From Tubulanus polymorphus (lineage: Eukaryota; Animalia; Nemertea): a stretch of DNA of 64,000 bases. The notes beneath the pieces are model-generated. The model worked only from the letters and a program-made list of their open reading frames with translations, was not told the origin of the DNA and made no database searches. Location of the stretch: positions 13,751,807 to 13,815,806 of the forward strand of contig NC_134031.1 of the NCBI RefSeq assembly GCF_964204645.1, read 5' to 3'. Below, piece after piece: positions 577 to 44,772 of the stretch. The number at the start of each line of letters is the position of its first letter. The stretch's first letter is position 1. The position numbers and the translations under genes were made by a program.

Positions 577-593
577 TTATTTTACATATTTTC

Positions 594-935
594 TCATTCG
601 AAATCTATTTCATGGTGCCCTTTTTCATTCTTACCTTTGTATACGAAATAGAAATCTCCAGAACATAATTCTTCTAGATCTTCACTTGATAATCTATGAA
701 ATCTATCTGGTAAATAAGTTCTGAATTTATGTATATTTCCTTTTAATCCTTCATATTCTAAATGAATTACTAATTTATCTCCATATTTGTTAGTAACTGT
801 AACAATGTTAGTAATTAAATATTTCTTGTGAATTGTTAACTCAGTTAGTTTTTTGAATTTATGATCTACAGATTTTACATTTGTGGTATCTTTAATTCTA
901 TCTAAGAATTCATTGTGTACTTGTTTACTCTCCAT
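594..935 (-). CDS. Small Polinton hypothetical protein, possibly OB-fold/ssDNA-binding
   Basis: Intact 113-aa ORF between PolB and the penton-like ORF, same strand and composition, with TAAATG start context; function is a guess from beta-rich motifs (KYG..LVIHL, YLPDRF, FVYKG). Confidence 0.65.
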   Translation of the reverse strand: MESKQVHNEFLDRIKDTTNVKSVDHKFKKLTELTIHKKYLITNIVTVTNKYGDKLVIHLEYEGLKGNIHKFRTYLPDRFHRLSSEDLEELCSGDFYFVYKGKNEKGHHEIDFE

Positions 936-963
936 TTATTATACAAATTTTTATTGAAATTGA

Positions 964-17467: not shown

Positions 17468-18622
17468 GTGTATCAATATGACGAATGGTCTGTTCGGTTC
17501 TATATCAATGTCTTCGTACTGCCGCCGATTATGGCAGCGGGTTGGGCGATGAACTGTCTCGTAGTCGCCACCTTAATTCGGCTGAAATCTACTCACCCGT
17601 CGATTCGTTTGGCTGATGCAGATATGGGTGATCTATTTGGACATTTTCTTGCCGATACTTTACGATATGTGTTGTTTTATATTTACTATGGTGATTTCGT
17701 ATTCATCGACCCCTTCCACATTTACCCTAAAATGTACATCTATGGCACAATTCAAATTCGCAATGGATTTATGAATATTCGTAACTGGTTGACAGTTTTT
17801 ATACAATTTGAACGATTCATAACGATTTTAGGCTAAAAAAAATTGATACCTTGTTTCTCCGCTCTGCTGAGCTTAAATGTTGACCCGGCCGGCCGCCTAT
17901 CTACCCTGTACATTACTTTTTTAAAAATCGTGATCAATTTTACCATAACAGACCCGGCCGCTATAGAAATGAACTGTTTACAAATTGTATCATATTTTAC
18001 AAAAATGACCCGGCCGCTGCGAAACAAGGTATCATTTTTGTTTAGCCTTATTTCCACTAAAGGCGGGTCGATTTTGGACTAAAACTCGTATGAATCGCAT
18101 AATTTTCTCTTATTCTTCGTGTGCCTTTTTGTGGTATATTTACTATCCTATAACTTTAGAGGTAGAAAATTACATGGACCCTTGTCATGGGTTGAACAAT
18201 CGACTTGTGAGAAGATATCCCAAGGAATATGTTACATTGAACAAACTGTTAGATCCTATCATCAGACTGGTTGTTCCTGCTTTGCTAATTCTTATTGTAA
18301 ATACATGTCTTATTTTGACTCTTTATATCAAATTCAAACAGCGGAATGAATTATCGACCACACAAAAACAAGTGAGTGTCGGTGACTCTAAGGCAACGCG
18401 TATGGTGATAGCTATGAGCATAATCTTTCTGATTATGGAACTGCCTGGGACATTTTCGAAGCTGAGGTCATACATTAGCCCAAATTCTGTAATATGGGAG
18501 AAAGCAATGGATATTGCTTACGTAACAAGTGACTTAAATTCATGTTTTAATTTATTCTTTATTGTGCAGTTAATAAACAATTTTTACAGACTTTACGACG
18601 AATTTTGATCGCCTGTACTTGA
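17468..18622 (+). pseudogene. Intronless class A GPCR pseudogene (peptide/FMRFamide-receptor-like chemoreceptor type)
   Basis: TM1 GWAMN; TM3 ERFITIL|FPL split by a MITE; TM5 VVPALLILIVN; TM6 KATRMVIAMSIIFLIMELP; TM7 NSCFN followed by a frameshift (other frame gives YCAVNKQFLQTLRRIL); shortened TM2; no clean start. Confidence 0.85.
17831..18047. mobile_element. MITE with TTA TSD (Zator- or PIF/Harbinger-like) inside the GPCR CDS
   Basis: TIRs ggctaaaaaaaattgataccttgtttc / gaaacaaggtatcatttttgtttagcc; TTA on both sides. Confidence 0.9.
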
Positions 18623-24500: not shown

Positions 24501-27500
24501 AGCTCCTTAAGTTAATCGCGCGTATGAGGCAAATTCAAATTTTCTATATTTCTCCATACCGTCCTTCTCAAAAAGTGTAGTTTACATCCGGGACACATGG
24601 GCATTGGCTAAATCGTGGCGACGAAAATGACGGTCACGGACGGACTTTCGTCGAAACTTGCGGGCCGCGTCGCGCGGGTAGTTTAAATACGTGAATGAAG
24701 GATAAAAAAATGATTTCGTGTAATTTTCAGAATATTTACAAAGAATATTCACAAAATAGTGTCAAAAAATATTATTTTTAGTTCGTATTCCTCCGTAGAA
24801 ACCGATTGCAAGACTGGATTCCAATCCCACGAAAAGCACAGTCCCTTAGCAACGGGTCGAATTTTTTAGAATAACAAGCGCGCCGGTTTCACAGCATCAC
24901 TAAGGGTCGAGTCCCGGAGAATAAAGCGCGCGTGCGGTCCGCGTGTTACAAAATGACCGACCCGCCCCACACAAGTACCAAATAATTAACTCAAAATTTT
25001 GCCAATCCCTGGGAGTAAAATGCCTCGATTTTTTAACATATCTTATCTTTATGTGTCTTTTACTCCCGTTTTTCAAACGTTATCCCCTTTTCCGTTTTGA
25101 GTAAAATTCGTATACGCTATAATCCGTATTTAATATACCGTTGTTCCATTAATTCCGTACCCATGCAACCCGTTGTAATACTAAAAGCCGTTTTTCAGCA
25201 TTACGCGAGCGTATGCTGGGTAAACTATCGCTGATAGATGAAAACACAAACAAATTTATGCCAGTTCATGTTTTATTTCTGAATGCAAATTCCTTACTGA
25301 ACAAATTGATGCATAATATTTACAGATCAACCGATTATTAACGCAATTACGGATCAAAACGTCGCACGAAGAGCAGGTGTGACAGACAGTTGTTTATACA
25401 TCCATGATTGATTTGTCTTATGAGAATGATAAGCGCACAGCGAGCGCCGAAGGCGCGAGCTGGAAGCTCCCTAAGTTAATCGCGCGTGTGAGGCAAATTC
25501 AAATTTTCTATATTTCTCCATACCGTCCTTTTCAAAAAGTGTAGTTTACATCCGGGACACATGGGCATTGGCTAAATCGTGGCAACGAAAATGACGGTCA
25601 CGGATGGACTTTCGTCGAAACTTGCGGGCCGCGTCGCGCGGGTAGTTTAGATACGTGAATGAAGGATAACAAAATGATTAGGTGTAATTTTCAGAATATT
25701 TACAAAGAATATTCACAAAATAATGTCAAAAAATGTTATTTTTAGATCGTATTTCTCCGTAGAAACCGATTGGAAGACTGGATTCGAATCCCACAAAAAA
25801 ACAGTCCCTTAGCAACGGGTCGAATGTTTTAGAATAACAAGCGCGCCGGTTTCACAGCATCACTAAGGGTCGAGTCCCAGAGAAAAACGCGCGCGCGCGG
25901 TCCGCGTGTTACAAAGTGAACGTCCCGCTCCACACAAGTACTGAATAATTAACTCAAAATTTTGCCAATCCCTGGGAGTAAAATGCCGCACGTTTTTAAC
26001 ATATCGTATCTTTATGTGTTTTTTACTCCCGTTTTTCAAACGTTATTCCCCTTTTCCGTTTCGAGTAAAATTCGCTATAATCCGTATTTAATATACCGTT
26101 GTTCCATTAATTCCGTACCCATGCAACCCGTTGTAATACTTAGGAACAAATCTTTAGTGTAAAACATATAAAACTATTGAAGCCATGAGATTTAATGTAG
26201 AAATCTGACGTTTTTTAACTACAGAAAAATTTATTCTCGTGTAATCGATAAAACAATAGGCTCTCAATATGTAATCAACATTCCCAAACTTCCACGTTAT
26301 TTTTCGCAGAAAATGATTTTCTTTTCTTTTTTGATCACGGGTCCCTTAATTCGCTCGAGTCATATGTTGGGTGATTTTTTTTTTGGTCACGCCACCGGGT
26401 GCCTTCCTTCAGCAAAACCTACATTCTTTACAATGTAGAACTTGGAAACAAATTTCTTGTGTAAAACATAACTGTGAAAGCCATTCGTAGAAGATATCTG
26501 ACGATACAGAAAGATTTATTCTCGTATGAAAGATAAAACAAACAAGGCTTTCAATTGTAATCAATACTCTCAAAGCATGTTTTTTTTCGCAAAAAGGAAT
26601 TCCTTTTCTATACATGTATTTGATCACGGCGAATCTTCGCTCGAATAGATCTTCGACATTTTGGGTGATTTTCTTTGGCCATACCGAACACGTGCTCCCG
26701 CAAAACCTATGTTTTTTTTACAACGCAGAATTCTATATAAGTTGCCGAAAGGGCACTCGCCTCTATTTAAATCAATAAAACTCTGGCTGTGCGCTTCACC
26801 AAGTTTCGACTTTGACATATTAATTATAATGATAATTTTATTTTTATTTTTAACATATAATATTTACACATCCGTTCACCTCAGCAAATTACCGGTAATT
26901 ATTTTATTCCGAAAAAAAGTACCGTGTAGACACTAGGGAAAACTTCTAAGCGGGTGGGGGAATCCTCATATACATGTATAACAAGTGGACTGCCAATAAT
27001 GGCTTAATAAGCGCACAGCGAGCGCCGAAGGCGCGAGCTGGAAGCTCCTTAAGTTAATCGCGCGTGTGACGCAAATTCAAATTTTCTATATTTCTCCATA
27101 CCGTCCTTCTCAAAAAGTGTAGTTTACATCCGGGACACATGGGCATTGGCTAAATCGTGGCGACGAAAATGACGGTCACGGACGGACTTTCGTCGAAACA
27201 TGCGGGCCGCGTCGCGCGGGTAGTTTAAATACGTGAATGAAGGATAACAAAATAATTTTCAGAATATTTACAAAGAATATTCACAAAATATTGTCAAAAA
27301 ATGTTATTTTAAGTTCGTATTTCTCCGTAGAAACCGATTGGAAGACTGGATTCGAATCCCACAAAAAGCACAGTCCATTAGCAACGGGTCGAATTTTTTT
27401 AGAATAACAAGAGCGCCGGTTTCACAGCATCACTAAGGGTCTAGTCCCGGAGAATAACGCGCGCGCGGTCCGCGTGTTACAAAATGAACGTCCCGCTCCA

Positions 27501-29001
27501 CACAAGTACTGAATAATTAACTCAAAATTTTGCCAATCCCTGGGAGTAAAATGCCGTGCGTTTTTTAACATATCGTATCTTTATGGGTTTTTTACTCCCG
27601 TTTTTCAAACGTTATTCCCCTATTCCGTTTCGAGTAAAATTCGCTATAATCCGTACTTAAAATACCGTTGTTCCATTAATTCCGTACCCATGCAACCCGT
27701 TGTAATACTTAGGAACAAATCTTTAGTGTAAAACATATCAAACTATTGAAGCCATGAGATTTAATGTAGAAATCTGACGTTTTTAAACTACAGAAAAATT
27801 TATTTTCGTATAATCGATAAAACAATAGGCTCCACAATATGTAATCAAAATTCCCAAACTCCCACGTTGTTTTTCGCAGAAAATGATTTTTTTCTTTTTT
27901 AATCTTCAAATTTCTTGTGTAAAACATATAAAACTGTTAAAGCCGTTCGTAGAACATATCTGACGATACAGGAAGATTTATTGTCGTAAAACAAACAAGG
28001 CTTTCAATTTGTAATCAATACTCCCAAAGCATGTTTTTTTTCGCAAAAATGAATTCCTTTTCTATACACGTATTTGATCACGGCGAATCTTCGCTTGAAT
28101 AGATCTTCGACATTTTGGGTGATTTTCTTTGCCACGGACCTCGCCGAACACAGGTGCCCCCGCAAAACCTATTTTTTTACAATGTAGAATTCTGTATAAG
28201 TTTGCCGAAAGGGCACTCGCCTCTATTTATTCATTAAAACTTAAGACTGGCTGTGCGCTTCACCAAGTTTCGACTTCGACATATTAAGCGCACAGCGAGC
28301 GCCGAAGGCGCGAGCTGGAAGCTCCTTAAGTTAATCGCGCGTATGAGGCAAATTCAAATTTTCTATATTTCTCCATACCGTCCTTCTCAAAAAGTGTAGT
28401 TTACATCCGGGACACATGGGCATTGGCTAAATCGTGGCGACGAAAATGACGGTCACGGACGGACTTTCGTCGAAACTTGCGGGCCGCGTCGCGCGGGTAG
28501 TTTAAATACGTGAATGAAGGATAAAAAAATGATTTCGTGTAATTTTCAGAATATTTACAAAGAATATTCACAAAATAGTGTCAAAAAATATTATTTTTAG
28601 TTCGTATTCCTCCGTAGAAACCGATTGCAAGACTGGATTCCAATCCCACGAAAAGCACAGTCCCTTAGCAACGGGTCGAATTTTTTAGAATAACAAGCGC
28701 GCCGGTTTCACAGCATCACTAAGGGTCGAGTCCCGGAGAATAAAGCGCGCGTGCGGTCCGCGTGTTACAAAATGACCGACCCGCCCCACACAAGTACCAA
28801 ATAATTAACTCAAAATTTTGCCAATCCCTGGGAGTAAAATGCCTCGATTTTTTAACATATCTTATCTTTATGTGTCTTTTACTCCCGTTTTTCAAACGTT
28901 ATCCCCTTTTCCGTTTTGAGTAAAATTCGTATACGCTATAATCCGTATTTAATATACCGTTGTTCCATTAATTCCGTACCCATGCAACCCGTTGTAATAC
29001 T
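21362..29001. repeat. Near-exact 3,820-bp tandem duplication (21362-25181 and 25182-29001)
   Basis: Identical ORF-track entries at +3820; the only difference I noticed is one T in a homopolymer (~24351 vs ~28171). Confidence 0.92.
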
Positions 29002-31225
29002 AAGGAAGAAATCATTAGTGTAAAACATATAAAACTATTGAAGCCATGAGATTTAATGTAGAAAACGGACGTTTTTAAACTACAGAAAAATCTATCCTCG
29101 TGTAATCGATAAAACAATAGGCTCTCAATATGTAATCAACGTTCCCAAACATCCACGTTGTTTTTCGCAGAAAATGATTTTTTTCTTTTTTAATCATGGG
29201 TCCCTTAATTCACTCGAAGATTTATCATATTTTGGGTGTTCTTTGGTCACGCCACCGGGTGCCTTCCTTCAGCAAAACCTACATTTTTTGCAATGTAGAA
29301 CTTGGGAACAATTTTTTTGTGTAAAACATATAAAACTATTAAAGCCGTTCGTAAAACATATCAGATAAGTGCATATATAATATCATACAAGATCTATCGT
29401 CGTATGAAAGATAAAACAAACAAGGTTTTCAATTTGTAATCAACACTCCCAAAGCATGTTTTTTTTCCGCAAAAATGAATTCCTTATACATGTATTTGCT
29501 CACGGCGAATTTTCGCTCGAATACGTAGATCTTTGACATTTTGGGTGATTTTCTTTGCCACGGACCACGCCGAACACGTGCCCCCGCAAAACGTATGTTT
29601 TTTACAGTGTAGAATTATGAGTTGGGAAGGGCACTTGCCTCTATTTATTCATTAAAAATTAAGACTGGCTGTGCGCTTCACCAAGTTTCGACTTTGACAT
29701 ATTAAGCGCACAGCGAGCGCCGAAGGCGCGAGCTGGAAGCTCCTTAAGTTAATCGCGCGTATGAGGCAAATTCAAATTTCCTATATTTCTCCATACCGTC
29801 CTTCTCAAAAAGTGTAGTTTACATCCGGGACACATGGGCATTGGCTAAATCGCGGCAACGAAAATGACGGTCACGGACGGACTTTCGTCGAAACTTGCGG
29901 GCCGCGTCGGGCGGGTAGTTTAAATACGTGAATGAAGGATAACAAAATGATTTTGTGTAATTTTCAGATTATTTACAAAGAATATCCTCAAAATATTGTC
30001 AAAAATGTTATTTTTAGTTCGTATTTCTCCGTAGAAACCGATTGGAAGACTGGATTCGAATCCCACAAAAAGCACAGTCCCTTAGCAACGGGTCGAATTA
30101 TTTAGAATAACAAGCGCGCCGGTTTCACAGCATCACTAAGGGTCGAGTCCCGGAGAATAACGCGCGCGCGCGGTCCGCGTGTTACAAAAAGACCGTCCCG
30201 CTACACACAAGAACTGAATAATCAACTCAAAATTTTGCCAATCCCTGGGAGTAAAATGCCGTGCGTTTTTTAACATATCGAATCTTTATGTGTTTATTAC
30301 TCCCGTTTTTCAAACGTTATTCCCCTTTTCCGTTTCGAGTAAGATACGTATATACTATAATCCGTACTTACAATACCGTTGTGCCATTAATTAAGTACCC
30401 ATGCAACCCGTTGTAATACTTACTCTTTAGTGTAAAAAACATAAAACTATTGAAGCCATGAGATTAAATGTAGAAATCTGACGTTTTTTAACTACAGAAA
30501 ATTTTGTTTTCGTGTAATCGATAAAACAATAGGCTCTCAATATGTAATCAACATTCCCAAACTCCCACGTTGTTTTTCGCAGAAAATGATTTCTTTTTCT
30601 TTTTGTAATCACGGGTCCATCGATTCGCTCGAAGATCTATCATATTTTGGGTGATTTTCTTTGGTCCCGCCACCGGGTGCCTTCCTTCAGCATAACCTAC
30701 ATTTTTTACAATGTAGAACTTGGAAACACAGTTCTTGTGTAAAACATATAAAACTATTAAAGCCGTTCGTAAAAAATATCAGATAAGTGCGTATATAATA
30801 TCATATAAGATTTGATAATATCGTCGTATGAAAGATAAAACAAACAAGGCTTTCAATTTGTAATTAACACTCCCAAAGCATGTTTTTTTCGCAAAAATGA
30901 ATTCCTTTTCTATACACGTATTTGATCACGGCGAATCTTCGCTCGAATAGATCTTCGAACACTCCCAAAGCATGTTTTTTTCGCAATAATGAATTCCTTT
31001 TCTATACATGTATTTGATCACGGCGAATCTTCGCTCGAATAGATCTTCGACATTTTGGGTGATTTTCTTTGGCCACGGACCACGTCGAACACAGGTGCCC
31101 CCGCAAAACCTATTTTTTTACAATGTAGAATTCTATTTAAGTTGCCGAAAGGGCACTCGCCTCTATTTATTCATTAAAACTTAAGACTGGCTGTGCGCTT
31201 CACCAAGTTTCGACTTTGACATATT
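21611..31225 (+). mobile_element. Cluster of Helentron/Helitron2-type non-autonomous units (HINE, ~1.3-1.5 kb) starting at 21611, 23189, 24467, 25431, 27009, 28286 and 29704
   Basis: Each starts aagcgcacag plus hairpin gcgcc-gaa-ggcgc and carries the subterminal inverse ctgtgcgctt ~25 bp before the end ...gacatatt; several head-to-tail junctions (catatt|aagcgc); no TSD; internal subrepeats. Confidence 0.8.
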
Positions 31226-31418
31226 AGTTTATGATTATAAAACTAGCTACGCCAAAAACGGCGGAATACGCCAGAAATGGCGAATGTTTTTATGTGTACC
31301 CATGGCAACGTTTAATTGAAAACTTTATAATAGTTTTTAAAACTAGTTCCCAAATTAATTTTTAACAAAAATCATGATTAATAAGCGCACAGCGAGCGCC
31401 GAAGGCGCGAGCTGGAAG

Positions 31419-34400
31419 CATTATGAGAATGCCGGTTTGCTAGCGTATCTATTTAACACCCGTATTGCTCGGGTTAGTTTTACTATCAACGGGTGGCGCT
31501 GTATGTAAATTTCACATAAATCAACGACTTTCGGCACAGTACAAAGATACAGTACGGTGTTTAAGGACATGATTCCATAGGACCCATACCAGAGACATTT
31601 TGTTCAGACAAGGACTATTAGTTAAACACTAATCTTCATTTTCAGCAATTAACGATCTGGTGAATTAATTAGTGATTCGGCCTTTCGGTGGTTCGAGAAA
31701 AAATGCCCGCAAAATAAGAACCTAACGAACCAGGGCTGACCACAAATTACCCAACAGATAAATTTTCGAAACGACACAATCCAATCATGTTTGGTATCAA
31801 ATGTGGCGTGGACCATGGTCTTTTAACTGACCAATGCATGACCAGTACTGACCATATAGTTAATTATTTGTTTGCAAACAATTAAGTTGTTTGGTGTCAA
31901 ATAACTAGATATGATGTGGGCATTAATCTAAGAATTGTTTAACTGACCAATGCTTGACCAGTACAGACCAGTTACCAGTGCTAACCAGAACCCCCATAAG
32001 TAATTTATATGTTTAGTGAATCCTTCGTTAGTACTACTAACTCTTTGTCGCTTGAAAAAGTCTTGTCCGATTTTTGTTGTAGGTAGCGAGCTAACTTTGA
32101 AATTCCGCTAAAATGCATAAGATTTTTACGTAGGGTTTTGAACGAACAACGTTTCCATTTGTAATTGTAACGTGCGCATTTGAGCCTGTAACGTGCACAT
32201 TTCACTCGCGTGAACGTGCGTATCGGTACCAACATGCGAGACTTGTCAAACTTTTACGATCAAGACTTTTAAACTGAACAAAGAAGATATCATATCATAT
32301 TATATATACATGAATAGATGGAATGATAATGTAGTAGTTTGAAATGTTTCGTAGCTGCTGTCCACTGACCACAGATAAAAGCTAATTGCCTGATATGAAA
32401 TATATTTTTGTTATAGAGATGTTGTAGATCAGTGAGAATTCAAACTTATGGTTAATTTTGAGTGATCACAACGCTAACCAATAGAGAAAGCTGTAAGGCC
32501 TAAGAAAGGATGCATTAAGTATAACATATCTTTCAATATAATGATGAAGTATTCAACTGGCCATCACAACAATAGTTTGACTTATCTTATTGAAAAATAC
32601 CGGAGTGTTAATGGGAAAACCTTGAATTCGAAACAATTCCTCACTCAATCGTTTACTTTGAAAACACAATTTGCATTTTGTGTACATGTATTTTTTTCTG
32701 CACCAAAAGCATGAAGTATATTATCTTTGCTTGTAAAAATTTGAAATTTTGGGGAAGATTTTTGGCCTCGTTAACCTGTGAACACGTCCTTCATAAATTT
32801 TCTAAGACCGACCCTTGAAATAATGCTGAGAGTTTCGAGGATAATTTTGGTAGGATGTAAACTTAGGCCGCTTCGTATCCGTGGATGGTTGCTAATTATT
32901 GATTCTATACACAATAATCATAAGTACCATGAGATTCGATAGAATATCGTTTTTCAATCATACGTACACGAATTATCGCGACATAAAGATAAATAATATG
33001 TTCATATACTTTTTACGTCTTATACTGTATATTTCTTTAGTAGTATAAATAAAGAGTGGATCAGCAGGCCACCTGAGACCATTCCACGATCTAAGGTCAG
33101 TTGCCAAAAGTTAGTAAGTTTACCAGTGGATAGTTAACATGTATAATGACAATTAAATTTTCATTGCTAAAATAACTTTGTACTTGTTGACTCAAAAGCA
33201 GAGAATTGAAAATACGATAATACGATACGAAAAATCAGTGTACAAATTCAAAAAGATTATCTCTAGTGAGAGATCGAACGTTGTGTCGTAATTTTCTAAT
33301 GATAAAACATCGTTTGAAATTTGAAATGTGTACATAGTTGATCTTTTTCAGTGTATTTAGTCATGTATCATATTGGATGATGGTTAATTTAAACTATCTT
33401 TTGGGAAACGGGTCCCAGAGCTGTATCCTTTACTCCTGTAATAGAGGATGCAATCTATTTGCGACAAACAGCTAGTGCAAATAGCTAGAAAAGGTAACAA
33501 TAGTGCATTGGCAAACTTACATTGGTTGTTTAGGTTTTTCGAAGGGGAGAATTTGTGGGAAAATTAATCATTACTGAGATATATCCGTGGCGAGCTTTTC
33601 CAGGGATTTAAAAAGTTGAGCTGTACACAAGGAATTTTGTGTAGTCCAATATCCGTGATTACCTCTGGCGTGGAGAGATACAATCTAAAACCAACCCTAG
33701 AGTCAAATATTTTACCACAATTTTTTATGATCAATAAAAAGATTGAGTAATAGACATTCAAACAGTATTATCTAAATTCCACTCCATTTTAAACTCATTC
33801 ATCTCTACACAAACTCCAACTTGTTGAACAGTCCACATTAAAATTAGGGACCACTATTCTTGCTCATCTACACTGGCTACCAATCTAACAAAGGATTAAA
33901 TTTGAGTGTTTGATGTTATAACAATACCAGACTGAATTATGGATTCGGTTTCTACTTTTTAATTGAACATTTATATCACATATTTGGCATCATTTTTAGC
34001 AGTATATGGAATAACCTATCCATATATCATGTTCAATTTTATATAATCTGATTTTTGAGATGTCATTCAATCAATACATTCACATGCGGTCGTTGCTTTC
34101 AATAGCCACCACGGACTGGCTCCTTATTATTTCTTTGGCGATACCATTGGCGGACGATCCCACACGTTTCTTGCTCCAGCCCTAGAATGCTCAATGTTCG
34201 TCATGAACCCCGATTTGAATTTAAATTCAAAATACTCCTAAAACACACCTGTTAACTAGATTACTCTAAAACACCTTTATGTGCAAGAATCAGTGAAATT
34301 GGCGCTTTATCAGTTGTATTCATCATTCGTACCCACGAATCTCGTATCGTATCCTATGAATGTGGAGACCCATCCTCGTAAAGAGAATGAATAGGCTCTG

Positions 34401-37183
34401 TTGCGTTCATATCATTTGATATGAGGCTACGTGTCATCTTCAATCACGTTGTTTTTTTAAAGGGTGGGCGAGAATATATTCTTATGTTTTTGTTTCTCTG
34501 AATGTTGCTATTTAAGAGTTCAATAATTTCAGTCTACCAAACAAAGGATTTTCTGTATGTTTCGTGACATGTTTTTCCATAACCCTAGGAGAGCATTTTA
34601 GGTATTTCTTTGCGGATGACCGAAAGCTGCTGTCCCTTTCTAGTAATTTGATGATATCCGTCGAAATCTAAATTCTAAAAAGGAATCAGGCATATCTTCT
34701 TGTTTGACTAAATATGAACTCAACAACAAGTGACACTCCCTTCAAAGGCGCCGAAGTAAAATCATGTGTCGAGTGGAGATGATATTGTGTCAGAATTTCT
34801 TCAAAATCGGAGAAAATAGAATATTTTGAAAATAATCATTTTACATGTATGTTTAAATCCGTTATAACTGGAGCAATTTTCATGAAAAAATATCTATGTA
34901 ATCAGCGAAATGTAACTAAGAAGAATACTATGTTTAAAAAGTTATCAAAGACATTTGAAAAAAGTTTTCTGAATTCGTCAACTGTTAAACTAGTAACAAC
35001 CAGATGTGTTCCCATTTAACCACCGACCGCGAGCCGAGTCGAAGTGAGATGTGCCCTACACTGAAAATCTCAAGTGCTATACAACCGGTTTTTTTAGGTG
35101 CCTCTGAATGTCGGCCGTTAAAAAACTGAACAATTCCCATTTGGAAAGGGCCTACGTAGTTAGAGAAAATTCAAGATGTGTATATCGTGTGATGCAGGCT
35201 CCATATTTCATGTGCGTTTGGAATTTAACCTTGTTTATAACGAAACACGCATGTATTTATGCTATTTTAGATTTAAAAAGAGCGCACGAAAGTGTTTCAT
35301 GAGACCCGCAAATAACGTCAAGTTATTCATGCATTTTTGATTTATATGAATAAATTTCGCTTCGAAATCTTTAAATTTCTCAGGTGGATTATTCAATAAA
35401 TTCACAACAGTCCATTATGGATTAGTTTGACGCCAATCGTTCTTTTAAAGATCTTTCTTTCTCGAAGAAAGATTTTCTTAAAAACTTTGATTATGGCGAA
35501 TCTTTTATGTGTCCGATAGTTAAACCTTCGGGTATTATACTAGAACACAAATTTTTAAAGATATTCATAACATACTGAAGGATATCACAGTTTATACCCG
35601 AATATATATATAGTTGGATAGATCTTTTTGTTTCGACTCGCATGCGACAGTAAAAACGGTACTTGATATAATAAGTGAACTTCATCATTGATATTTTCAC
35701 TAATCTACTTGAATTCCAAAAAAGAACTGACAATGAAAAAGGGTTACAGCTGTGACTGATATCGCTCCAAATTTCAATTCCTATGAACACTTTTCATATA
35801 AAGAAAACTATTAACGAAACAGTTTTTAGAGGCGAAGAATCCGCGTTACCATCGAATTTTCATAACTTGAAGGAATGGTTATTGCCTCGGTGATCACTGG
35901 TCTAGTACGCGGTTTTCTGAAATGAAAGTGGCCAAGTCTAAAGAACAACTATTGTATCACATGATTTCAAATATTAGGAACCCAAATGCGTTTAATGATT
36001 TAATTGATTGGTATCGCGCAGATTGGTTGAAAGACGGGTGTTAGTCACCTTGTGATTTAATTGTTTTTCATGCATCGATTAATTAATCTTATTATAACTT
36101 ATTTGTAGGCGCTTCCCGCAAACATTTTCTATTCGTTGAGTTTTCAAACGCAGTACTGTTCAGATGATTCGAGTCAAGTAGTAAAAATGTTTATGTATTA
36201 GCATTACTATGCAGTGAAAATAACGCACTGCGGCAAGTGAGGTGCTGTGATCCAGATGTGTAACCCATTTATGGGTAATAAATTTCCATCATGTCAACGC
36301 CATTCAAAAACAGTAGCAAAAATTTCTGCTGGTTTCTAGAAATAGCAATACGACGACAAGCACTTTCGAATTCGACCACGATATTTGAGAAGTTTCACTT
36401 GGGCAGTGGTGGTCAGTGATGGTCAATTTATGAAATTTAATGGCGAATCCTTTCTAGTTTCACACCAAATGCGGTACCGGTACATCGTTCTTTCAAGAAG
36501 TTGCAATTGGTCAGTGGTGGTCAGTGATGGTCAATTTATGAATTTTCAATGGCGAATCCTTTCTAGTTTGACACCATAACGCGGTATATCATTTTCATAT
36601 TCGAGAAGTTTGAATTGGTCATTGGTGGTCAGTGATGAATTTGCAATGATGATTCCTTAGTAGTTTGAAAACAAACATTACATGATAAATTTCCGAAATT
36701 CGAAGTCAAGTGTTCAGACTCGGGGATATCTCAATTGGTCAGTTACTGACCATCATGGTGTCACCATTGTGGTCTATAGCTCAAATGAAACATGTGGAAC
36801 CGACGAAGGGGCCCAAAAGCGTTAAGTCCTTTTCTGGAGTGACGTGATCCAAAAATGCCCTAACTGGAAAAGGCAGTCTCTCAATTGGATGAAACCAAAT
36901 CGGACAGGACAATTAAAATTTGGGAAGGTCACAGGTAGTGGTCTTTCTACGAAGCCCACGCGGTGAGCGTATTATTATGAAATCTTTTTTTAAACCACCA
37001 TGTACCACGAAGTAATAAGCATCGTTGCAAGCACTTGAAACAGCCATTAACCACTTGAAACTGTCAGATCAATCATACCGCATCCCCGCAAAGAGGGGTG
37101 GTTTAGCAAACCGGAGTTTTCATTGGCCTCTCTAGACTACCCCGCCAGTACGGGTAGCCGAGCAAACCGGAAAACTCATAATG
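31419..37183 (+). mobile_element. Unclassified 5.8-kb non-coding TIR element, copy A
   Basis: Ends cattatgag-aatg-ccggtttgct and agcaaaccgg-aaaa-ctcataatg; TGACCA-rich subterminal repeats; interrupts the HINE at ggaag^ctcc. Confidence 0.85.
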
Positions 37184-40100
37184 CTCCTTAAGTTAATCGC
37201 GCGTATGAGGCAAATTCAAATTTTCTATATTTCTCCATACCGTCCTTTTCAAAAAGTGTAGTTTACATCCGGGACACATGGGCATTGGCTAAATCGCGGC
37301 GACGAAAATGACGGTCACGGACGGACTTTCGTCGAAACTTGCGGGCCGCGTCGCGCGGGTAGTTTAAATACGTGAATGAAGGATAACAAAACGATTTTGT
37401 GTAATTTTCAGAATATTTACCAAGAATATCCTCAAAATATTGTCAAAAAATGTTATTTTTAGTTCGTATTTCTCCGTAGAAACCGATTGGAAGACTGGAT
37501 TCGAATCCCACAAAAAGCACAGTCCCTTAGCAACGGCCATTATGAGTTTTCCGGTTTGCTCGGCTACCCGTACTGGCGGGGTAGTCTAGATAGGCAAATG
37601 AAAGCTCCGGTTTGCTGAACTACCCCTCTTTGCGGGGATGCGGTATGATGTTTGATCTGACAGTTTCAAGTGGTTAATGGGTGTTTCAAGTGCTTACAAC
37701 GATGCTTATTACTTAATGTGGTACATGGTGGTTTAAAAAAAGATTTCATAATAATACGCTCAAAGTATCGGCCTACCGCGTGGGCTTCGTAGAAAGACCA
37801 CTGCCTGTGGCCTTCCCAAATTTTAATTGTTCTGTCCGATTTGGTTTCGTCCAATTGAAAGACTGCCTTTTCCAGTTAGGGCATTGTTGGATCACATCAC
37901 TCAGGAAATGACTTACGGTTTTGGGCCCTTTCGTCGGTCCCACGTGTTTCATTTGAGCTATAGACCACATGGTGACACCATGATGGTCAGAAACTGACCA
38001 ATTGAGATATTCCTGAGTCTGAACACCTGACTGCGAATTTCGGAAATTTATCAAGTCATGTTTGTTTTCAAACTACCGAGGTATCATCATTGCAAATTCA
38101 TAAATTGACCATCACTGACCACCACTGACCAATTCAAGCTTCTCGAATATGAGTTCGATATACCGCGTTATGGTGTCAAACTAGAAAGGATTCGCCATAA
38201 ATATTGAGAATTCATAAATTGACCATCACTGACCACCACTGACCAATTCAAACTTCTCGAATATGAGAACGATATACCGCGTTATGGTGTCAAACTAGAA
38301 AGGATTCGCCATTGAAAATTCAGGAATTGACCATCACTGACCACCACTGACCAATTCAAACTTCTCGAATGTAAGAAAGATATACCGGTACCGCATTTGG
38401 TGTGAAACTAGAAAGCATTCCCCATTAGAATTCATAAATTGACCATCACTGACCACCACTGCCCAAGTGAAACTTCTCGAATATCGTCGAATTCGAAAGT
38501 GGTTGTCGTCGTATTGTTATTTCTAGAGACCAGCAGTATGTTTTGCTACTGTTTCTGAATGGCGTTGACATGATGGAAATATATTACTCCTAAATAGGTT
38601 ACACATCTGGATCACAGCACCTCACTTGCCGCAGTGCGTTATTTTGACTGCATAGTAATACTAATACATAAACTTTTTTACTACTTGACTCAAAGCTTGA
38701 CGCGAATCATCTGAACAGTACTGCGTTTGAAAACGAATAGAAAATGTTTGCGAGAAGCACCTGCAAATAAGTTATGATAAGATTAAATCTATGGTTAATC
38801 GATGCTTAAAAAAACAATGAAATCACAGGCAAGATGACTAAGAACCGTCTTTCAACCAATCAGCGCGATACCAATTAATTAAATCATTAAACGCATTAGG
38901 CTCCTAATACTTGTAATCATTTGTCGTTCTTTAAACTTGGCCACTTTTGTTTCAGAAAACCGCGTACTAGACCAGTGGTCACCAAGGCATTAAAAAAGTT
39001 TTGAAAATTCGATGGTAACGATTTGTCCGTCAAAAAACTGTTTCGTTAATATTTCAAGTTTTTTTAAACTCTTGTACAGAATTCACTATATGAAAAGTGT
39101 TCATAGGAATTGAAATTCGGTGTGATATCAGTCACCTGTTACCCCTTTTTCATTATCAGTTCTTTATTGCGCTATCATGCGCTCTTCTAAAATAGAAAAG
39201 AACATGTGTGTTTCGTTATAAACAAGGTTAAATTCCAAACGCACATGAAATATCACACAATATACACATCTAGCATTTTCTCTAACTAGGCCCTTTCCAA
39301 ATGGCAATTGTTTAGTTTTTTAACGGCCGACATTCAGAAGCACCTAAAAACCAGTGGTAGCGCTTGAGATTTTCAGTGTAGGTTAGGCCACATCTCACAT
39401 CGACTCGGCTCGCAGTCGGTTCGTTTAATGGGAACACATCTGGTTGACACTAGTTTCACAGTTGACGAAATCAGAAAACTTTTTTCAAATACCTTTGATA
39501 ACATCTTAAACATAGTATTCTTCTTAATTACATTTCGTTGATTCCATAGATATGTTTTTATGAAAATTGCTCCAGTTATAACGGATTCAAACATACATGT
39601 GAAATCATTATTTTCAAAATATTCAATTTTCTCCGCATTTGAAGAAATTCTGACACAATATCATCTCCACTCGACACATGATTTTACTTCGGCGCCTTTA
39701 AGGGAGTGTCCCTTAAAGTTGAGTTCTTACTTAGTCAAACAAGGAGATATGCCTGATTCCTTTTTAAAATTTAGATTTCGACAGATATCATCAAAATTAC
39801 TAGAAAGGGACAGCAGTGTTCGGTCATCCACGAAAAATACCTAAAATGCAGTCCTAGGGTTATGGAAAAACAGGACACGAAACATACAGAAAAATCCTTT
39901 GTTTGGTTGACTGAAATTATTATTGAACTCTTAAAAAGCGACATTCAGAGAAACAAAAACATAAGAATATAATCTCGCCCACCCGTTAAAAAACATAACG
40001 TAATGATATGAGGCCATGTGTCATCTTTAATTGAAATCACATTATATTCATTCTCATGCGAGGATGGGTCTCCAAATTCGTAAGATAAGGAGAATAATGG

Positions 40101-40248
40101 TTTGAATGATGAATACAACTGATAAACGCCAATTTCACTGATTCTTGCATATAAATGCTCAAAGGCGCTTTACAGTAATCGAGTAAACAGGTGCGTTTTT
40201 AGGAGTCTTTTGAATTTGAATTCAAATCGGGTGTTCATGACGACTATA

Positions 40249-40653
40249 GGCGCTTTTACGAAACTGAATCTTTGTAAATCGATTTAAGTTTCACGTTTAC
40301 GGCACGCGGTTTAGTGAATCCGATGTGGTAAATCAACTCGTTTATGGACGCGGTTTAGTAAATTGATTTATTAAATCGACTAACTTGCTCGGCGAGCAAG
40401 TTAGTGGCGATTTAGTCAGTGAAATCCAACATGGCGTCCTCTTCGACCGCGGGCTAAAGACATCTATTGCAGACCATCATCTATCAATAATTCGGTCACC
40501 ATTGACGCCCATTTTCTTTCGAATCGCGACCTTTCAATTGATAAATTGATTCGACTCATTTACGAAAAACGATTCGATTTACTAATCCTTTCGTTTTCCA
40601 ACATCGAATCGGATTTAGCTAAACCGAATCAGATTCAATTTCGTAAAAGTGCC
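40249..40653. mobile_element. PIF/Harbinger-like MITE nested in copy B
   Basis: TIRs ggcgcttttacgaaactgaatct / agattcaatttcgtaaaagtgcc; absent from copy A; TSD imperfect. Confidence 0.7.
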
Positions 40654-40667
40654 TTATAATTGAGCAT

Positions 40668-41144
40668 ACCTCAGAAATGCTGTTGCTAAATTACGGACGT
40701 CTACTCACAGCTTAATTATTGAAAAAGGTAGACACCGCGGTATAGAAAAGGAAAATCGTTTGTGCAATATTTGTAATGTGTTGGACGATGAATGTCACTT
40801 TTTGTTCCATTGTAAAAGAGTTGCCAATCTGAGAAAGGAATTAAATATAGCTATCTTAGACGTTAATAGTTTAATCTCCACTTTCGACAACCTAAACCCT
40901 ACAACCAGCATTGTTCAGCTAGCCAAATTTATTAAACTCGGTCTGGCATTGTCCTAATATTTCTTCGATTAATGTTCTGTATATTTTCAATTATGTTTTA
41001 ACTCATCTGTAATTAGTGTTAATTATGCTTCATTTTATTATTTGTTTATCTCCTATTATGTATATACTTGATTTTACCGAATTTGTATCAGTTGCAAACA
41101 ATGTTTCATTAATGTTTATGCTGAATAAAGATTGAATTGAATTG
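40668..41144 (+). mobile_element. 5'-truncated RTE-X-like 3' end nested in copy B
   Basis: KLRTSTHSLIIEKGRH..LCNICNVLDDECHFLFHC; aataaa and an (attga)n tail; absent from copy A. Confidence 0.8.
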
Positions 41145-44100
41145 AATTCTAGGGCTGGAGCAAGAAACGTGTGGGATCGTCCGCTAAGGTATCGCTAAGG
41201 AGTCAGTCCGTGGTGGCTTTTGAAAGCGACGACCGCATATGAATGCATTGATTGAATGACATCTCAAAAGTCAGATTATATAAAATTAAACATGATATAC
41301 AGATAGGTTCTTCCAATTAGGCCTATACTGGTAAAAATGAAATGACCCAATATGTGATATAAATGTTCAATCAAAAAGTAGAAAGTGAATCCGTAATTCA
41401 GTATGGTAGGCCTATTGTTACAACATCAAACACTCAAATTCAATCCTTTGTTAAATTGGTAGCCAGTGTAGATGAGCAAGTATCGTGGTCCCTGATTTTA
41501 GTTATCGTAATAATTCAAGCCACGCGATTTTGAACTGTTCAACAAGTTGGAGTTTGTGTAAAGATGAATGAGTTTGAAATGGAGTGGACTTCAGATATTA
41601 CTGTTTGCATGCCTCTGTCTATTAGGCTACTTAATCTTTTTACTAATCATAGAAAATTGTGGTAACGGTTGGTTTTAGATTGTATCTCTCCAAGCCAGAG
41701 GTAATCACGGATATCGGACTACAAAAAAATTCCTTGTGTAAAGCTCAACTTTGTAAATTCCTGGAAAAGCTCGCCTCGGATATTTCAATAATGATTAAAC
41801 ATTATTTTTCCCAACGAAAAACCTAAACAACCAATGTACGCTTGCTTTAAGTTTACCAATGCACTATCGTTGCTTTTTCTAGCTATTTGTACTGTTTGCC
41901 GCAAAAAGATTGCATCCTCTATTACAGGATTTAAGGATACAACTCTAAAACCAGTTAGTTTAAATTAACCATTATACAATATGATACATGACCAAATACA
42001 CTGTTAATATGAAAAAGATCCACTATGTACACATTTCAAATCTCAAACCAAGTTTTATCATAAAAAAATCACGACACAACGTTCGATCGTTCACTAGAGA
42101 TCATCTTTTTGAATTTGTACACAGTGAATTTTAGTATCGTATTATGGTATTATCAATTCTCCGCATTTGAGTGTGACTATTCTACAAATACAAAGTTATT
42201 TTTAGCAATGAAGTTTTAATTGTCATTTTAAATGTTAACTATCCACTGGTATGTAAACTTACTAACTTTTGGCAACTGACCTCAAATCGTGGAATGGGCT
42301 CAGGTAGCCTGCTGATCCACTCTTTATTAATACTACTAAAGAAATATTCAGTATAAGAAGTAAAAAGTATATTAAAGTACTATTTATCTTTATATCGCAA
42401 TAATTTGTGTACGTATGATTGAAAAACGATATTCTATGGAGTCTCATGTTGCGTACTTATGATTATTGTGTATAAGATCAATAATTAGCAACCTTCCACG
42501 GATACGAAGCGGCCTAAGTTTACATCCTACCATAATTTTCTCTAAACTCTCAGCATTATATCAAGATCAGTCTTAGAAAATATATGAAGGACGTGTTCAC
42601 AGGTTAACGAGGCCAAAAATCTTCCTCAAAATTTCAAATTTTTACGAGCAAAGATAATATACTTCATGCTTTTGGTGCAGAAATAATGGATGCCCACAAA
42701 CTGCAAATTTTGTGTTTTCAAAGTAAACGATCCGAGTGTGGAATTGTTTCGAATTCAGGGTTCTCCCATTTACTCTCCGGTATTTTACAATGTTTCAATA
42801 AGATACGTAAGTCGCACTTTTGTTGTGATACAGCTTTCTCTATCGGTCAGCGTTGTGATCACTTAAAATTACCCATAAGTTTGAATTCTCACTGAACTAC
42901 TACATCCCTTATAACGAATATATATTTCATATGAGGCGATTAACTTTGATGATCTGCGGTCAGTGGACAGCAGTTACAAAACATTCAAAACTACTACATT
43001 ATCTTCCATCTATTCATTATTCATATATATATGATATGATATGATATGATATCTCCTTTAGTGTTCAGTTTAAACGTCTTGAACGCAAATGTTTGACAAG
43101 TCTCGCATATTGATACCGATACGCACGTTCACACTAGTGAAATGTGCACGTTACAGGCTCAAATGCGCACGTTACAATTACAAATCGAAACGTTGTTCGT
43201 TCAAAACCCGATGTGAAAATCTTTTGCATTTAGTGGGAAATTTCAAAGTTAGCTCGCTTCCTACAATAAAAATTGGACAAGACTTTTAAAACGACACATT
43301 TAATAAGGGTAGTACTGACGAAGGATTCAGGCAATACCCCGTGTTATTTCTAAAAACATTTAACCGGTAATTAGACAGTACTGGTGTAGCTTGTACAGGT
43401 AAAAGAGTTGTTATATTTACGTTCAGACCGAATGAAATTATTTGATACGAGACACGACTAAGTTGTGTCCGAAACAGATAAATATAGCTATGTGGTCAGT
43501 ATTGGTCAAGATTTGGTCACTTGAATAGTTGTTAAATGAAAGCCCACACCATTTCTAATTATTTGACACCAAACACGACTGTGTTGCTTCTAGAATAAAC
43601 AAATTGCTTTAAGGTCAGTATTGGGAAAATATTGGTCAGTTAAATAGTTGTTAGATCATAGCCCGCACCGTATCTAGTAGCTCGACGCCCAAACACGATT
43701 TTATTGCTTTACTAAACATAAAAATTACATATGGTGGGTTCTAGTTAGTGGTAACTGGTCAGTACTGGTCAAGCATTGGTCAGTTAAACAATTTTTAGTT
43801 TAATGTCCACATTATATCTAGTTATTTGACACCAAACAACTTAATTGTTTGCAAACAGATAATTTACTATATAGCCAGTACTGGTCATGCATTGGTCAGT
43901 TGATAGACCAAGGTCCACGCCACGAGTTATTTGATACTAAACATGATTGTGTCGTTTCCGAAAATTTATCTGTTGGGCAATTTGTGGTCAGCCCTGGTTC
44001 GTTGGTTCTTATTTTGCGGGCATTTTATCTCGAACCACCGAAAGACTGAATTACTAATTAATTCAACAGATCATTAATTAATGGAAATGAAGATCAGTGT

Positions 44101-44772
44101 TAACTAAGTCCTTAGTCTGAATACAATGTATGTGGTATTATATGGGTGCTATGGTGCTGTGTACACCGAACTGTAACTTTTTATTTTCACTACTACCGTA
44201 ATTGACTATGATGTTTTCAAGTGGTCTTAAGTACCGCTAATAGCCGAAAGTCGTTGATTTATGTGAAATTTACACACAGCGCCACCCGTTGGTAGTAAAA
44301 TTCACCCGAGCAATACGGGTGTTAAATAGATACGCTAGCAAACCGGCATTCTCATAATGCGGTCGAATTTTTTAGAATAACAAGTGCGCCGGTTTCACAG
44401 CATCACTAAGGGTCGAGTCCCGGAGAATAACGCGCGCGCGCGGTCTGCGTGTTACAAAATGACCGTCCCGCTCCACACAAGTACCCAGTCCGTTGGAAAG
44501 AGTGCTGACTGCTAAAACCGGAGAACCCCATCAGTAATGCCTGGTAGGTTATGTTTGATTTTTTAGTTAGCAGGTTCGTTAAATCTGCTAGTTTCAAACA
44601 TAAAAAAGTAATTAGATTAGGGCATCGTATACGGAATATATTGCCGGCTCTGGTGTCGAACGGCCGCCGATATTTGCATTCAATGGATTGAATTGAGTCC
44701 GATTCCGCATAAACAAGCCCAATCCGGACATTAGTGTCCCGTCTCGGCCTAACCCTGGCCCTAGCGACGAAC

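What the first reader, a model, noticed from the sequence alone, without database searches (positions are those of the whole stretch)
31383..44483. Two diverged ~6-kb TIR elements without a clear TSD, inserted in opposite orientation into one Helentron unit
Seen: both copies share bipartite TIRs (CATTATGAG-N4-CCGGTTTGCT), lie 354 bp apart and form a ~13-kb quasi-palindrome. Copy A inserts at ggaag^ctcc; removing CATTATGAG...CTCATAATG restores the host exactly (equivalently a 2-bp GC duplication around ATTATGAG ends). Copy B leaves caacggc|cggtcg against consensus caacgggtcg, which is not a clean TSD. A and B differ by many substitutions and several-hundred-bp indels, while the host unit is very similar to its siblings. 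Inference: two long-diverged members inserted independently and recently at nearly the same spot, which suggests target preference and a working transposase elsewhere. The CATTA end and dense subterminal repeats recall CACTA/CMC elements, but those normally leave 2-3 bp TSDs. I cannot place this family.
Basis: partly seen in the sequence, partly recalled or inferred. Interest (0 to 1): 0.8.

Follow-up and report, generated by a model that had tools for sequence, protein, structure and literature searches.

The report
Unclassified transposon with one-base duplication
Two diverged copies of a gene-less, roughly 6-kb jumping-DNA family (about 150 copies in this animal genome) landed independently 354 bases apart; the family is unusual because it duplicates one base or none of its target and often lands beside its own copies, and its enzyme was not found.

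Summary
Copy A (31419-37183) and copy B (37538-44359, inverted) carry the same 23-bp bipartite end. They are about 86% alike. Both interrupt one unit of a tandem repeat, and seven uninterrupted sister units lie in the window.

They belong to two subfamilies of one family with about 280-340 ends genome-wide. Each is 96-98% identical to copies elsewhere, so these are two independent insertions and not a palindromic duplication.

"No TSD" needs refining:
- Six filled-versus-empty comparisons show exactly one duplicated base, of any kind.
- 50 of 76 paired ends carry the same base on both sides (chance 24%, P about 2e-14).
- Copy A is a clean zero-duplication insertion. Copy B has three extra bases.
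- The terminal C is almost invariant, so the element ends are cut precisely.

The elements are non-coding, even as a consensus. No PIF-type transposase or tyrosine recombinase lies inside any copy. Long copies hold only nested LINEs or Polinton-like elements.

I found no target motif. However, 11 of 52 ends have family DNA within 1.5 kb, often close to a resident end.

CACTA, Spy, Crypton, DIRS and Helitron membership each fail a tested feature. I read it as a trans-mobilised cut-and-paste family with a 0/1-bp stagger and an unplaced superfamily.

The parts
31419..37183 (+). Copy A, 5765 bp, A-subfamily; AATG-type end on the left and TTTT-type end on the right; non-coding
   Evidence: TIR hits. 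It is 96-98% identical to A-like copies elsewhere. No ORF exceeds 100 aa and there are no Pfam hits.
37538..44359 (-). Copy B, 6822 bp, B-subfamily, inverted relative to A; non-coding
   Evidence: TIR hits. It is 96-98% identical to B-like copies elsewhere and 85-89% identical to A, with indels.
31419..31441 (+). 23-bp terminal inverted repeat of A, AATG type
37161..37183 (-). 23-bp terminal inverted repeat of A, TTTT type
37538..37560 (+). 23-bp terminal inverted repeat of B, TTTT type
44337..44359 (-). 23-bp terminal inverted repeat of B, AATG type
37105..37114 (-). Second, subterminal CCGGTTTGCT motif at the TTTT end of A
37607..37616 (+). Second, subterminal CCGGTTTGCT motif at the TTTT end of B
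37184..37537 (.). 354-bp host spacer between the two inner (TTTT) ends; it is part of the interrupted tandem-repeat unit
   Evidence: It is collinear with seven sister units. At least 119 candidate copies of this segment occur genome-wide at 92-99% identity.
21609..31418 (+). Host tandem array: units of about 1.0-1.6 kb with a 3.8-kb higher-order period. It holds the seven uninterrupted sister units that serve as empty sites.
44360..44485 (+). Continuation of the interrupted host unit to the right of B
36381..36637 (.). Internal 108-bp tandem repeat of copy A (2.4 units)
38088..38484 (.). The same internal tandem repeat in copy B (114 bp, 3.6 units)

Best explanation
A and B are two independently inserted members of different subfamilies of one family of large (5.5-7.4 kb), gene-less, non-autonomous DNA transposons with terminal inverted repeats.

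Shown: the family has about 140-170 copies and at least three subfamilies. Its ends are precise: CATTATGAG, a 4-nt spacer (AATG at one end, TTTT at the other), then CCGGTTTGCT. Integration adds either one duplicated target base of any kind (roughly half to two thirds of events) or none (copy A). I found no target consensus beyond slightly GC-richer DNA. New copies land unusually often inside or within a few hundred bp of resident copies, frequently near their ends.

Inferred: a transposase encoded elsewhere, or now lost, binds the terminal 9-mer and the CCGGTTTGCT motif. It excises or copies the element exactly at the terminal C. It then joins the two 3' ends to target strands offset by 0 or 1 nucleotide, so gap repair yields a 0- or 1-bp duplication. 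Transposase bound to resident ends would bias capture of nearby target DNA. That would explain the head-to-head pair in this window.
For: Family and ends:
- There are 341 TIR matches with up to 2 mismatches and 280 exact ones. The reversed-pattern control gives none.
- Flanks are unrelated between copies.
- There are two main subfamilies plus a third that is about 85% identical to both.

Independent insertion:
- Seven empty sister units lie in the same array.
- A and B are each nearest to copies elsewhere.

Duplication:
- Six empty-site comparisons show +1 base, being C, C, A, C, T and C.
- 50 of 76 paired ends carry the same flanking base, against 24% by chance, P = 2.5e-14. This implies a real duplication in about 55% of insertions (paired by hand).
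- Copy A is exactly +0 against seven sister units.
- Only 4 ends lack the terminal C, against 280 that have it.

Non-coding:
- No piece exceeds 100 aa in A or B. The consensus of 5 A-like and of 3 B-like copies has nothing over 99 aa.
- No consistent Pfam signal appears in 115 ORF pieces.
- Small indels are spread throughout the A/B consensus alignment.

Self-proximity:
- 11 of 52 distinct ends have family DNA within 1.5 kb outside. P is below 1e-8 even if all copies sit in 70 Mb.
- Termini of different copies lie 6, 11, 35, 254, 324, 325, 354 and 629 bp apart.

Conserved ends: about 96-97% between subfamilies, against 85-95% for most of the interior.
Against: - No transposase was found, so the catalytic class is inferred only from the TIR architecture and the tiny duplication.
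- One third of the pairs lack the 1-bp repeat. Copy B has +3 bases, which a simple 0/1-bp stagger does not explain without an extra assumption: either one carried base on each side, or a prior 2-bp change at the site.
- Ectopic recombination between copies could create some of the mismatched flanks.
- I paired the 280 ends by hand from coordinate lists.
- In my searches of open papers I found no eukaryotic cut-and-paste group with a 1-bp duplication, so there is no precedent for the enzyme geometry.
- Self-proximity may partly reflect the general pile-up of repeats in the central regions of the contigs, where most copies lie.
Confidence: 0.6

Rival explanations
1. The family is a non-autonomous branch of the PIF/Harbinger-ISL2EU-Spy (PHIS) superfamily. 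A PHIS DDE transposase elsewhere in the genome mobilises it, with a target stagger shortened to 0-1 bp.
For: PHIS is the one described superfamily whose duplications already run 0 bp (Spy), 2 bp (ISL2EU) and 3 bp (PIF, Pangu, Nuwa) (PMC4122938, PMC4482050). The genome holds hundreds of DDE_Tnp_4 matches: 371 candidates, many with open frames.
Against: None of the 150 scored DDE_Tnp_4 matches lies inside a paired-end interval of the family. The flanks show no AAA|TTT or other AT-rich target; they are slightly GC-rich. According to PMC4482050, PHIS TIRs usually begin GG or AG, not CA.
Confidence: 0.2
2. This is the first reader's lead: a CACTA/Mirage/Chapaev (CMC) element with an aberrant duplication.
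For: The terminus begins CA, and one repeated subterminal motif exists. CMC duplications are short, 2-4 bp according to PMC4482050.
Against: The terminus is CATTATGAG, not CACTA/CACTG. The duplication is 0 or 1 bp, never 2-4 bp, in nine junctions. No CMC transposase was sought or found.
Confidence: 0.07
3. The element moves through a circular intermediate made by a tyrosine or serine recombinase (Crypton- or Tn916-like). The variable junction bases would then be crossover or coupling bases, not a duplication.
For: The junctions are irregular (+0, +1, +3). One locus has abutting ends with a 6-bp spacer. At A, the target dinucleotide G|C equals the joint that a circle would have.
Against: All 53 Phage_integrase candidates in the genome lie outside family copies. 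The base next to the ends is not fixed: A 62, C 92, G 57, T 69. A core-matching recombinase would need a fixed base there. The +1 base is a copy of the target base in all six tested cases. No internal region matches joined ends.
Confidence: 0.1
4. The ~13-kb quasi-palindrome arose as one event, either an inverted duplication of a single insertion or an assembly artefact, not as two insertions.
For: The arms are inverted and collinear over their whole length. A large inverted segmental duplication that contains family copies does exist on another contig (C3:14.65-14.69 Mb).
Against: The arms are only about 86% identical, while each is 96-98% identical to copies elsewhere. The 354-bp spacer and both outer flanks are collinear with seven sister units. 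An artefact would give near-identical arms.
Confidence: 0.02

Closest known systems
Spy transposons (PHIS superfamily; Han et al. 2014, PMC4122938)
   Same: They are TIR-bearing, presumably cut-and-paste elements of invertebrates that integrate without the usual multi-base target duplication. Most copies are non-autonomous.
   Different: Spy inserts strictly between AAA and TTT and never duplicates a base. This family has no such motif, sits in slightly GC-richer DNA, and duplicates one base in about half or more of its insertions. No PHIS transposase was found inside any copy.
ISL2EU and Mirage groups (2-bp duplications) and Tc1/mariner (TA)
   Same: They have very short target duplications, which implies closely spaced strand-transfer sites.
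   Different: Their duplications are a fixed 2 bp, usually with a sequence preference (TA/AT). Here the duplication is 0 or 1 bp of any base.
CACTA/CMC elements
   Same: The termini begin with CA, there is a subterminal repeated motif, and non-autonomous derivatives can be large.
   Different: The termini are not CACTA. The duplication is not 2-4 bp. No transposase link was found.
Insertion next to the element's own inverted repeats in bacterial IS30/IS3-type insertion sequences (from my own knowledge, not checked in a paper here)
   Same: New copies land beside or just inside the ends of resident copies. Abutting ends separated by a few bases occur.
   Different: Those are small bacterial elements that encode their own transposase and make 2-4-bp duplications. 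No homology was tested.

Membership tests
CACTA/CMC superfamily | Termini CACTA/CACTG | tested here: not met
   All 280 exact ends begin CATTATGAG.
CACTA/CMC superfamily | Target duplication of 2-4 bp (usually 3) | tested here: not met
   Nine junctions compared with empty sites: six +1, two +0, one +3 that is not a clean repeat.
CACTA/CMC superfamily | CMC-type DDE transposase | not tested
   No coding capacity in any copy examined.
Spy (PHIS) | Insertion exactly between AAA and TTT without duplication | tested here: not met
   Flank profile of 53 ends shows no AAA next to the ends. The A site is ggaag|ctcc. Most insertions duplicate one base.
Spy / PIF-Harbinger (PHIS) | DDE_Tnp_4-type transposase between the TIRs of autonomous copies | tested here: inconclusive
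   None of the 150 scored matches lies within a paired-end interval, but 221 further candidates were not scored.
Crypton / tyrosine-recombinase elements | Tyrosine recombinase gene; no TIRs | tested here: not met
   TIRs are present. All 53 Phage_integrase candidates lie outside family copies.
DIRS-like retroelements | Internal complementary region matching the joined termini; RT and recombinase genes | tested here: not met
   No match to joined ends with up to 3 mismatches in the window. No coding capacity.
Helitron / Helentron | No true TIRs; insertion between A|T or T|T; subterminal 3' hairpin | tested here: not met
   Symmetric 23-bp TIRs. The flanking base can be any of the four. Terminal 120 nt fold no better than shuffles, z -0.5 to -0.9.
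P superfamily | 7-8-bp target duplication | tested here: not met
   0/1-bp duplication. The likeness of the terminal 9-mer to the Drosophila P terminus is from memory only.
Generic non-autonomous TIR (class II, cut-and-paste type) transposon | Precise shared TIRs, unrelated flanks, empty paralogous sites, multiple dispersed copies | tested here: met

The most novel reading that the evidence does not exclude
The family represents an undescribed group, possibly a new superfamily, of eukaryotic cut-and-paste transposons. Its transposase would join the element to target strands offset by only 0-1 nucleotide and would be steered to DNA next to resident copies of the same element. If so, it would be the first eukaryotic TIR family with a 1-bp target duplication.
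Probability: 0.3. Interest if true: 0.75.

Novelty: new variant of a known kind. Interest (0 to 1): 0.6.

Why it matters
Duplication length is a main criterion for classifying DNA transposons, because it reports the spacing of the two strand-transfer sites of the enzyme. Spy was published as the only eukaryotic cut-and-paste group that makes no duplication. I found no open paper describing a 1-bp duplication for a TIR element.

This family is a clean, young case with about 150 copies and many paralogous empty sites, and it mixes 0- and 1-bp outcomes. It would therefore fill the gap between Spy (0 bp) and ISL2EU or Tc1 (2 bp). It also gives a handle on how transposase geometry sets the stagger.

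Landing beside its own ends is an unusual targeting behaviour for an animal transposon. It can build inverted pairs such as the one here, and such pairs are substrates for rearrangement.

The practical limit is that the enzyme is unknown.

Tried and rejected
1. Autonomous partner among long copies. All seven long copies I fetched (8-21.6 kb) are ordinary copies with nested inserts:
   - LINEs with endonuclease and reverse transcriptase;
   - 15-17-kb elements with about 410-bp TIRs, related to the Polinton-like element at the window start;
   - a 2.2-kb ORF-less repeat.
2. Ends whose interior differs (L015, L028). These are truncated copies.
3. Hidden coding capacity. I scanned 48 pieces of 55 aa or more from A and B, and 67 pieces of 33-54 aa from A, against Pfam. 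Each weak hit matched a different, unrelated family. Majority consensus sequences of the A-like and B-like copies were built in scratch only, for this non-viral, non-coding element. They also lack ORFs.
4. Rfam over 29-47 kb: nothing.
5. PIF-type transposase and tyrosine recombinase searches of the genome: no hit inside family intervals.
6. Single-strand hairpin ends (HUH-type mechanism): folding is no better than shuffles.
7. DIRS-type internal complementary region: absent.
8. Zero-duplication insertions explained as loss of a terminal base masked by the target. Rejected, because only 4 ends have a non-C first base against 280 with C.
9. One carried base on a single side as the explanation for mismatched pairs. 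This does not fit four of the five such pairs for which I hold sequence; C3_8k alone is compatible (by inspection).
10. Enrichment in the host repeat. Only C3a and C7:12640571 lie in it besides A and B. The second was found with a query taken from this window, so no unbiased claim is possible.
11. Fetching more copies.
12. Earlier-findings look-ups by sequence and by words gave no note on this family.
Full report
**1. The observation**

The bipartite end CATTATGAG-N4-CCGGTTTGCT occurs exactly four times in the window, at 31419 (+), 37183 (-), 37538 (+) and 44359 (-). Shuffled sequence gives 0.01 matches. These ends delimit copy A (31419-37183, 5765 bp) and copy B (37538-44359, 6822 bp).

The two ends of each copy are not equivalent. 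The 4-nt spacer is AATG at one end and TTTT at the other. A and B are arranged with their TTTT ends facing each other across 354 bp. The arms are collinear inverted repeats. A against the reverse complement of B is 85-89% identical in blocks, 97% over the terminal ~117 bp, and B carries several insertions of a few hundred bp.

The host is a tandem array at 21.6-31.4 kb, with units of about 1.0-1.6 kb and a 3.8-kb higher-order period. Deleting A and B in silico gives a sequence that aligns without interruption to seven sister units at 94-98% identity.
- The A junction is exact: ggaag|ctcc in all seven.
- The B junction has three extra bases: caacggc|cggtcg against caacgggtcg in all seven.

The 'dense subterminal repeats' are only one additional CCGGTTTGCT, at the TTTT end. 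I did not test whether the array is Helentron-derived.

**2. The family**

The window lies on contig 7 of a 268-Mb, 77-contig eukaryotic assembly. Earlier notes of this scan name it as the ribbon worm Tubulanus polymorphus. I did not verify that.

The end pattern matches 341 places with up to two mismatches and 280 exactly. The reversed-pattern control gives none. Ends pair up as AATG...TTTT at typical distances of 5.5-7.4 kb, which means about 140-170 copies. They are concentrated in the central 5-10 Mb of the large contigs. Flanks differ from copy to copy.

Copies fall into three groups:
- an A-like subfamily, 96-98% identical to A;
- a B-like subfamily, 96-98% identical to B;
- a third subfamily, about 85% identical to both.

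A and B are therefore independent insertions of diverged lineages. They are not an inverted duplication or an assembly artefact.

**3. Coding capacity**

A and B have no stop-free piece longer than 100 aa. I scanned 48 pieces of 55 aa or more from both copies, and 67 pieces of 33-54 aa from A. The few weak Pfam hits each went to a different, unrelated family. Rfam finds nothing.

Majority consensus sequences of five A-like and three B-like copies were built only in scratch, for this non-viral element. They contain no ORF above 99 aa. The A/B consensus alignment shows 85-98% identity, with small indels throughout and no exon-like islands. The elements are non-coding and must be mobilised in trans.

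**4. Long copies are not autonomous**

All seven copies of 8-21.6 kb that I fetched are standard elements with nested inserts.
- Three carry a 15-17-kb element with about 410-bp TIRs, inserted at three different positions. I only observed these elements.
- Three carry LINEs with endonuclease and reverse-transcriptase domains.
- Two, one of which also carries a LINE, hold part of the same 2.2-kb repeat without ORFs.

A search of the genome for the PIF/Harbinger DDE domain gave 371 candidates, of which 150 were scored. A search for tyrosine recombinases gave 53 candidates, all scored. No hit of either kind lies inside any paired-end interval. No partner enzyme was identified.

**5. The junctions**

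- Five insertions (L003/L004, L006/L007, C3b, C3_13k, C2_11k) show exactly one extra base. In each case it is a second copy of the target base next to the cut: C, C, A, C and T.
- A sixth copy, C7:12640571-12647033, lies in another unit of the same host family as A and B. It shows aaaagC[element]Cacagt against host aaaagcacagt. Its right flank is known only from the BLAST end point and the flanking base.
- Copy A is +0.
- L011/L012 is probably +0, but that rests on a single 92%-identical paralogue.
- Copy B is +3.

To test this genome-wide without fetching more DNA, I searched the end pattern with each of the four possible preceding bases. The counts were A 62, C 92, G 57 and T 69. I then paired opposite ends by hand. 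Of 76 unambiguous AATG/TTTT pairs no more than 22 kb apart, 50 have the same base on both sides as a direct repeat. Chance is 0.243, and P = 2.5e-14. The 15 pairs for which I hold sequence agree with this: 10 of 15.

All four bases occur about equally as the repeated base. Correcting for chance matches, about 55% of insertions carry a real 1-bp duplication.

The remaining third is not explained by loss of the terminal base, because only 4 ends have a non-C first base against 280 with C. A single carried flank base does not fit four of the five mismatched pairs I could read.

The three extra bases at B fit either of two readings:
- a 1-bp duplication of g plus one extra c on each side of the element; or
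- a 1-bp duplication of c at a site that already differed by 2 bp.

I cannot tell these apart.

**6. Target choice**

The flank profile of 53 ends shows no motif. GC content rises mildly towards the insertion point: 42% within 30 bp, against 37% beyond 300 bp.

The strong signal is proximity to the family itself. 11 of 52 distinct ends (10 events) have family sequence within 1.5 kb outside the element. The expectation is 0.5-2% per end. Examples:
- insertion 136 bp inside the AATG end of a B-like copy;
- insertion 220 bp inside a TTTT end;
- insertions at interior positions about 357 and 5458;
- termini of different copies 6, 11, 35, 254, 324, 325, 354 (this window) and 629 bp apart.

As for the host repeat, at least 119 candidate copies of the 354-bp segment exist. 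Besides A and B, two other copies lie in this repeat family. One of them is 19 bp from the B-site equivalent and in the same orientation. This is suggestive, but the query came from this window, so it is not an unbiased test.

**7. Mechanism**

Shown:
- precise symmetric ends with an invariant terminal C;
- 0- or 1-bp duplication of an arbitrary target base;
- no target motif;
- trans-mobilisation;
- clustering at resident copies;
- terminal ~115 bp conserved between subfamilies above most of the interior.

Inferred: a transposase recognises the terminal 9-mer and the CCGGTTTGCT motif, which is present once at one end and twice at the other. It joins both 3' ends to the target with a stagger of 0 or 1 nucleotide. 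Enzyme bound at resident ends would bias target capture to nearby DNA.

Evidence against other mechanisms:
- The subterminal palindromes fold no better than shuffled sequence (z -0.5 to -0.9). This speaks against a hairpin-guided single-strand mechanism.
- There is no internal copy of joined ends and no recombinase in the copies. This speaks against DIRS- or Crypton-type movement.

**8. Comparison with known groups**

According to the 2014 paper, Spy is the only eukaryotic cut-and-paste group without duplications, and it inserts strictly at AAA|TTT (PMC4122938). The wider PHIS superfamily spans 0, 2 and 3 bp, with TIRs that usually begin GG or AG (PMC4482050). My full-text searches for a 1-bp duplication of a TIR transposon found nothing relevant.

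The family meets the generic definition of a non-autonomous TIR transposon. It fails tested defining features of CACTA/CMC, Spy, Crypton, DIRS, Helitron/Helentron and P. I therefore file it as a new variant of a known kind: a cut-and-paste-type TIR element with a 0/1-bp duplication and self-proximal insertion. Its superfamily is open.

**9. Limits**

- Only two protein families were searched genome-wide.
- Dfam and Repbase could not be queried.
- The assembly of the inverted pair could not be checked against reads. However, the 14% divergence of the arms makes a collapse or mirror artefact unlikely.

Noticed in passing
L031-L033, L034-L036, L037-L039 (C1:12.62 Mb, C3:17.42 Mb, C3:17.98 Mb): Three of the full-length copies I fetched each carry a nested 15-17-kb element with about 410-bp TIRs beginning AGTAATT. 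The insertions are at three different positions, and the family sequence overlaps by 6-7 bp at each junction. These elements are 75-93% identical in DNA to window 1-4645. Several more 21-kb copies exist by coordinates. I observed them only.
   Followed up: partly
L044:600-5000; L040/L041; L052:1-1435: Non-LTR retrotransposons (endonuclease plus reverse transcriptase; one has a PHD finger and a GDSL esterase upstream) sit 88-102 bp from the AATG end in three different copies. Two of the LINEs are 98% alike and the third is about 75-79% alike. This points to a preferred LINE landing spot, or a LINE-derived stretch, at that position.
   Followed up: partly
G000:C11:339249-343949 and 498186-499770 (coordinates only): A solo AATG-type end preceded by C recurs with a period of 1559-1561 bp, and at about a dozen other places on contig 11. 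One end of the element has apparently been swept into a tandem or dispersed repeat.
   Followed up: no
L047:1398-1540 (C24:117796); L071:1366-1525 (C8:4422028): At the first locus, a 110-bp TTTT-end fragment abuts the AATG end of a full copy across 6 bp (cgtaag). At the second, two AATG ends face each other across 11 bp.
   Followed up: partly
G000:C4:10836860-10837183 and C4:13427284-13427608 (coordinates only): Two separate loci have AATG ends facing each other across 324 and 325 bp, with different flanking bases. This could be the same pair of preferred sites in a repeated host. I could not fetch the sequence.
   Followed up: no
G000:C8:2337769-2342763, 3148756-3155714, 3527795-3534729; C3:17789300-17798236; C6:15837849-15844085: Some elements carry the same end type on both sides (AATG/AATG or TTTT/TTTT). 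The three on contig 8 share the same flanking bases and may be segmental copies.
   Followed up: no
G000:C3:14653757-14690398 (coordinates only): The order and flanking bases of six family ends indicate a large inverted segmental duplication. It contains a head-to-head pair of copies whose TTTT ends are 254 bp apart.
   Followed up: no
window 964-4995 (-): A 1343-aa ORF lies in the AT-rich first 6 kb of the window (24-28% GC). Its only Pfam signal is a sub-threshold Endonuclease_7 match (E 8e-5). An earlier first-reader note calls this region a Polinton-like virus.
   Followed up: partly
window 16209-17480; L046; L042: A repeat of about 1.3 kb without ORFs is shared, at 93-98% identity, by the window and by the inserts nested in two family copies.
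   Followed up: no
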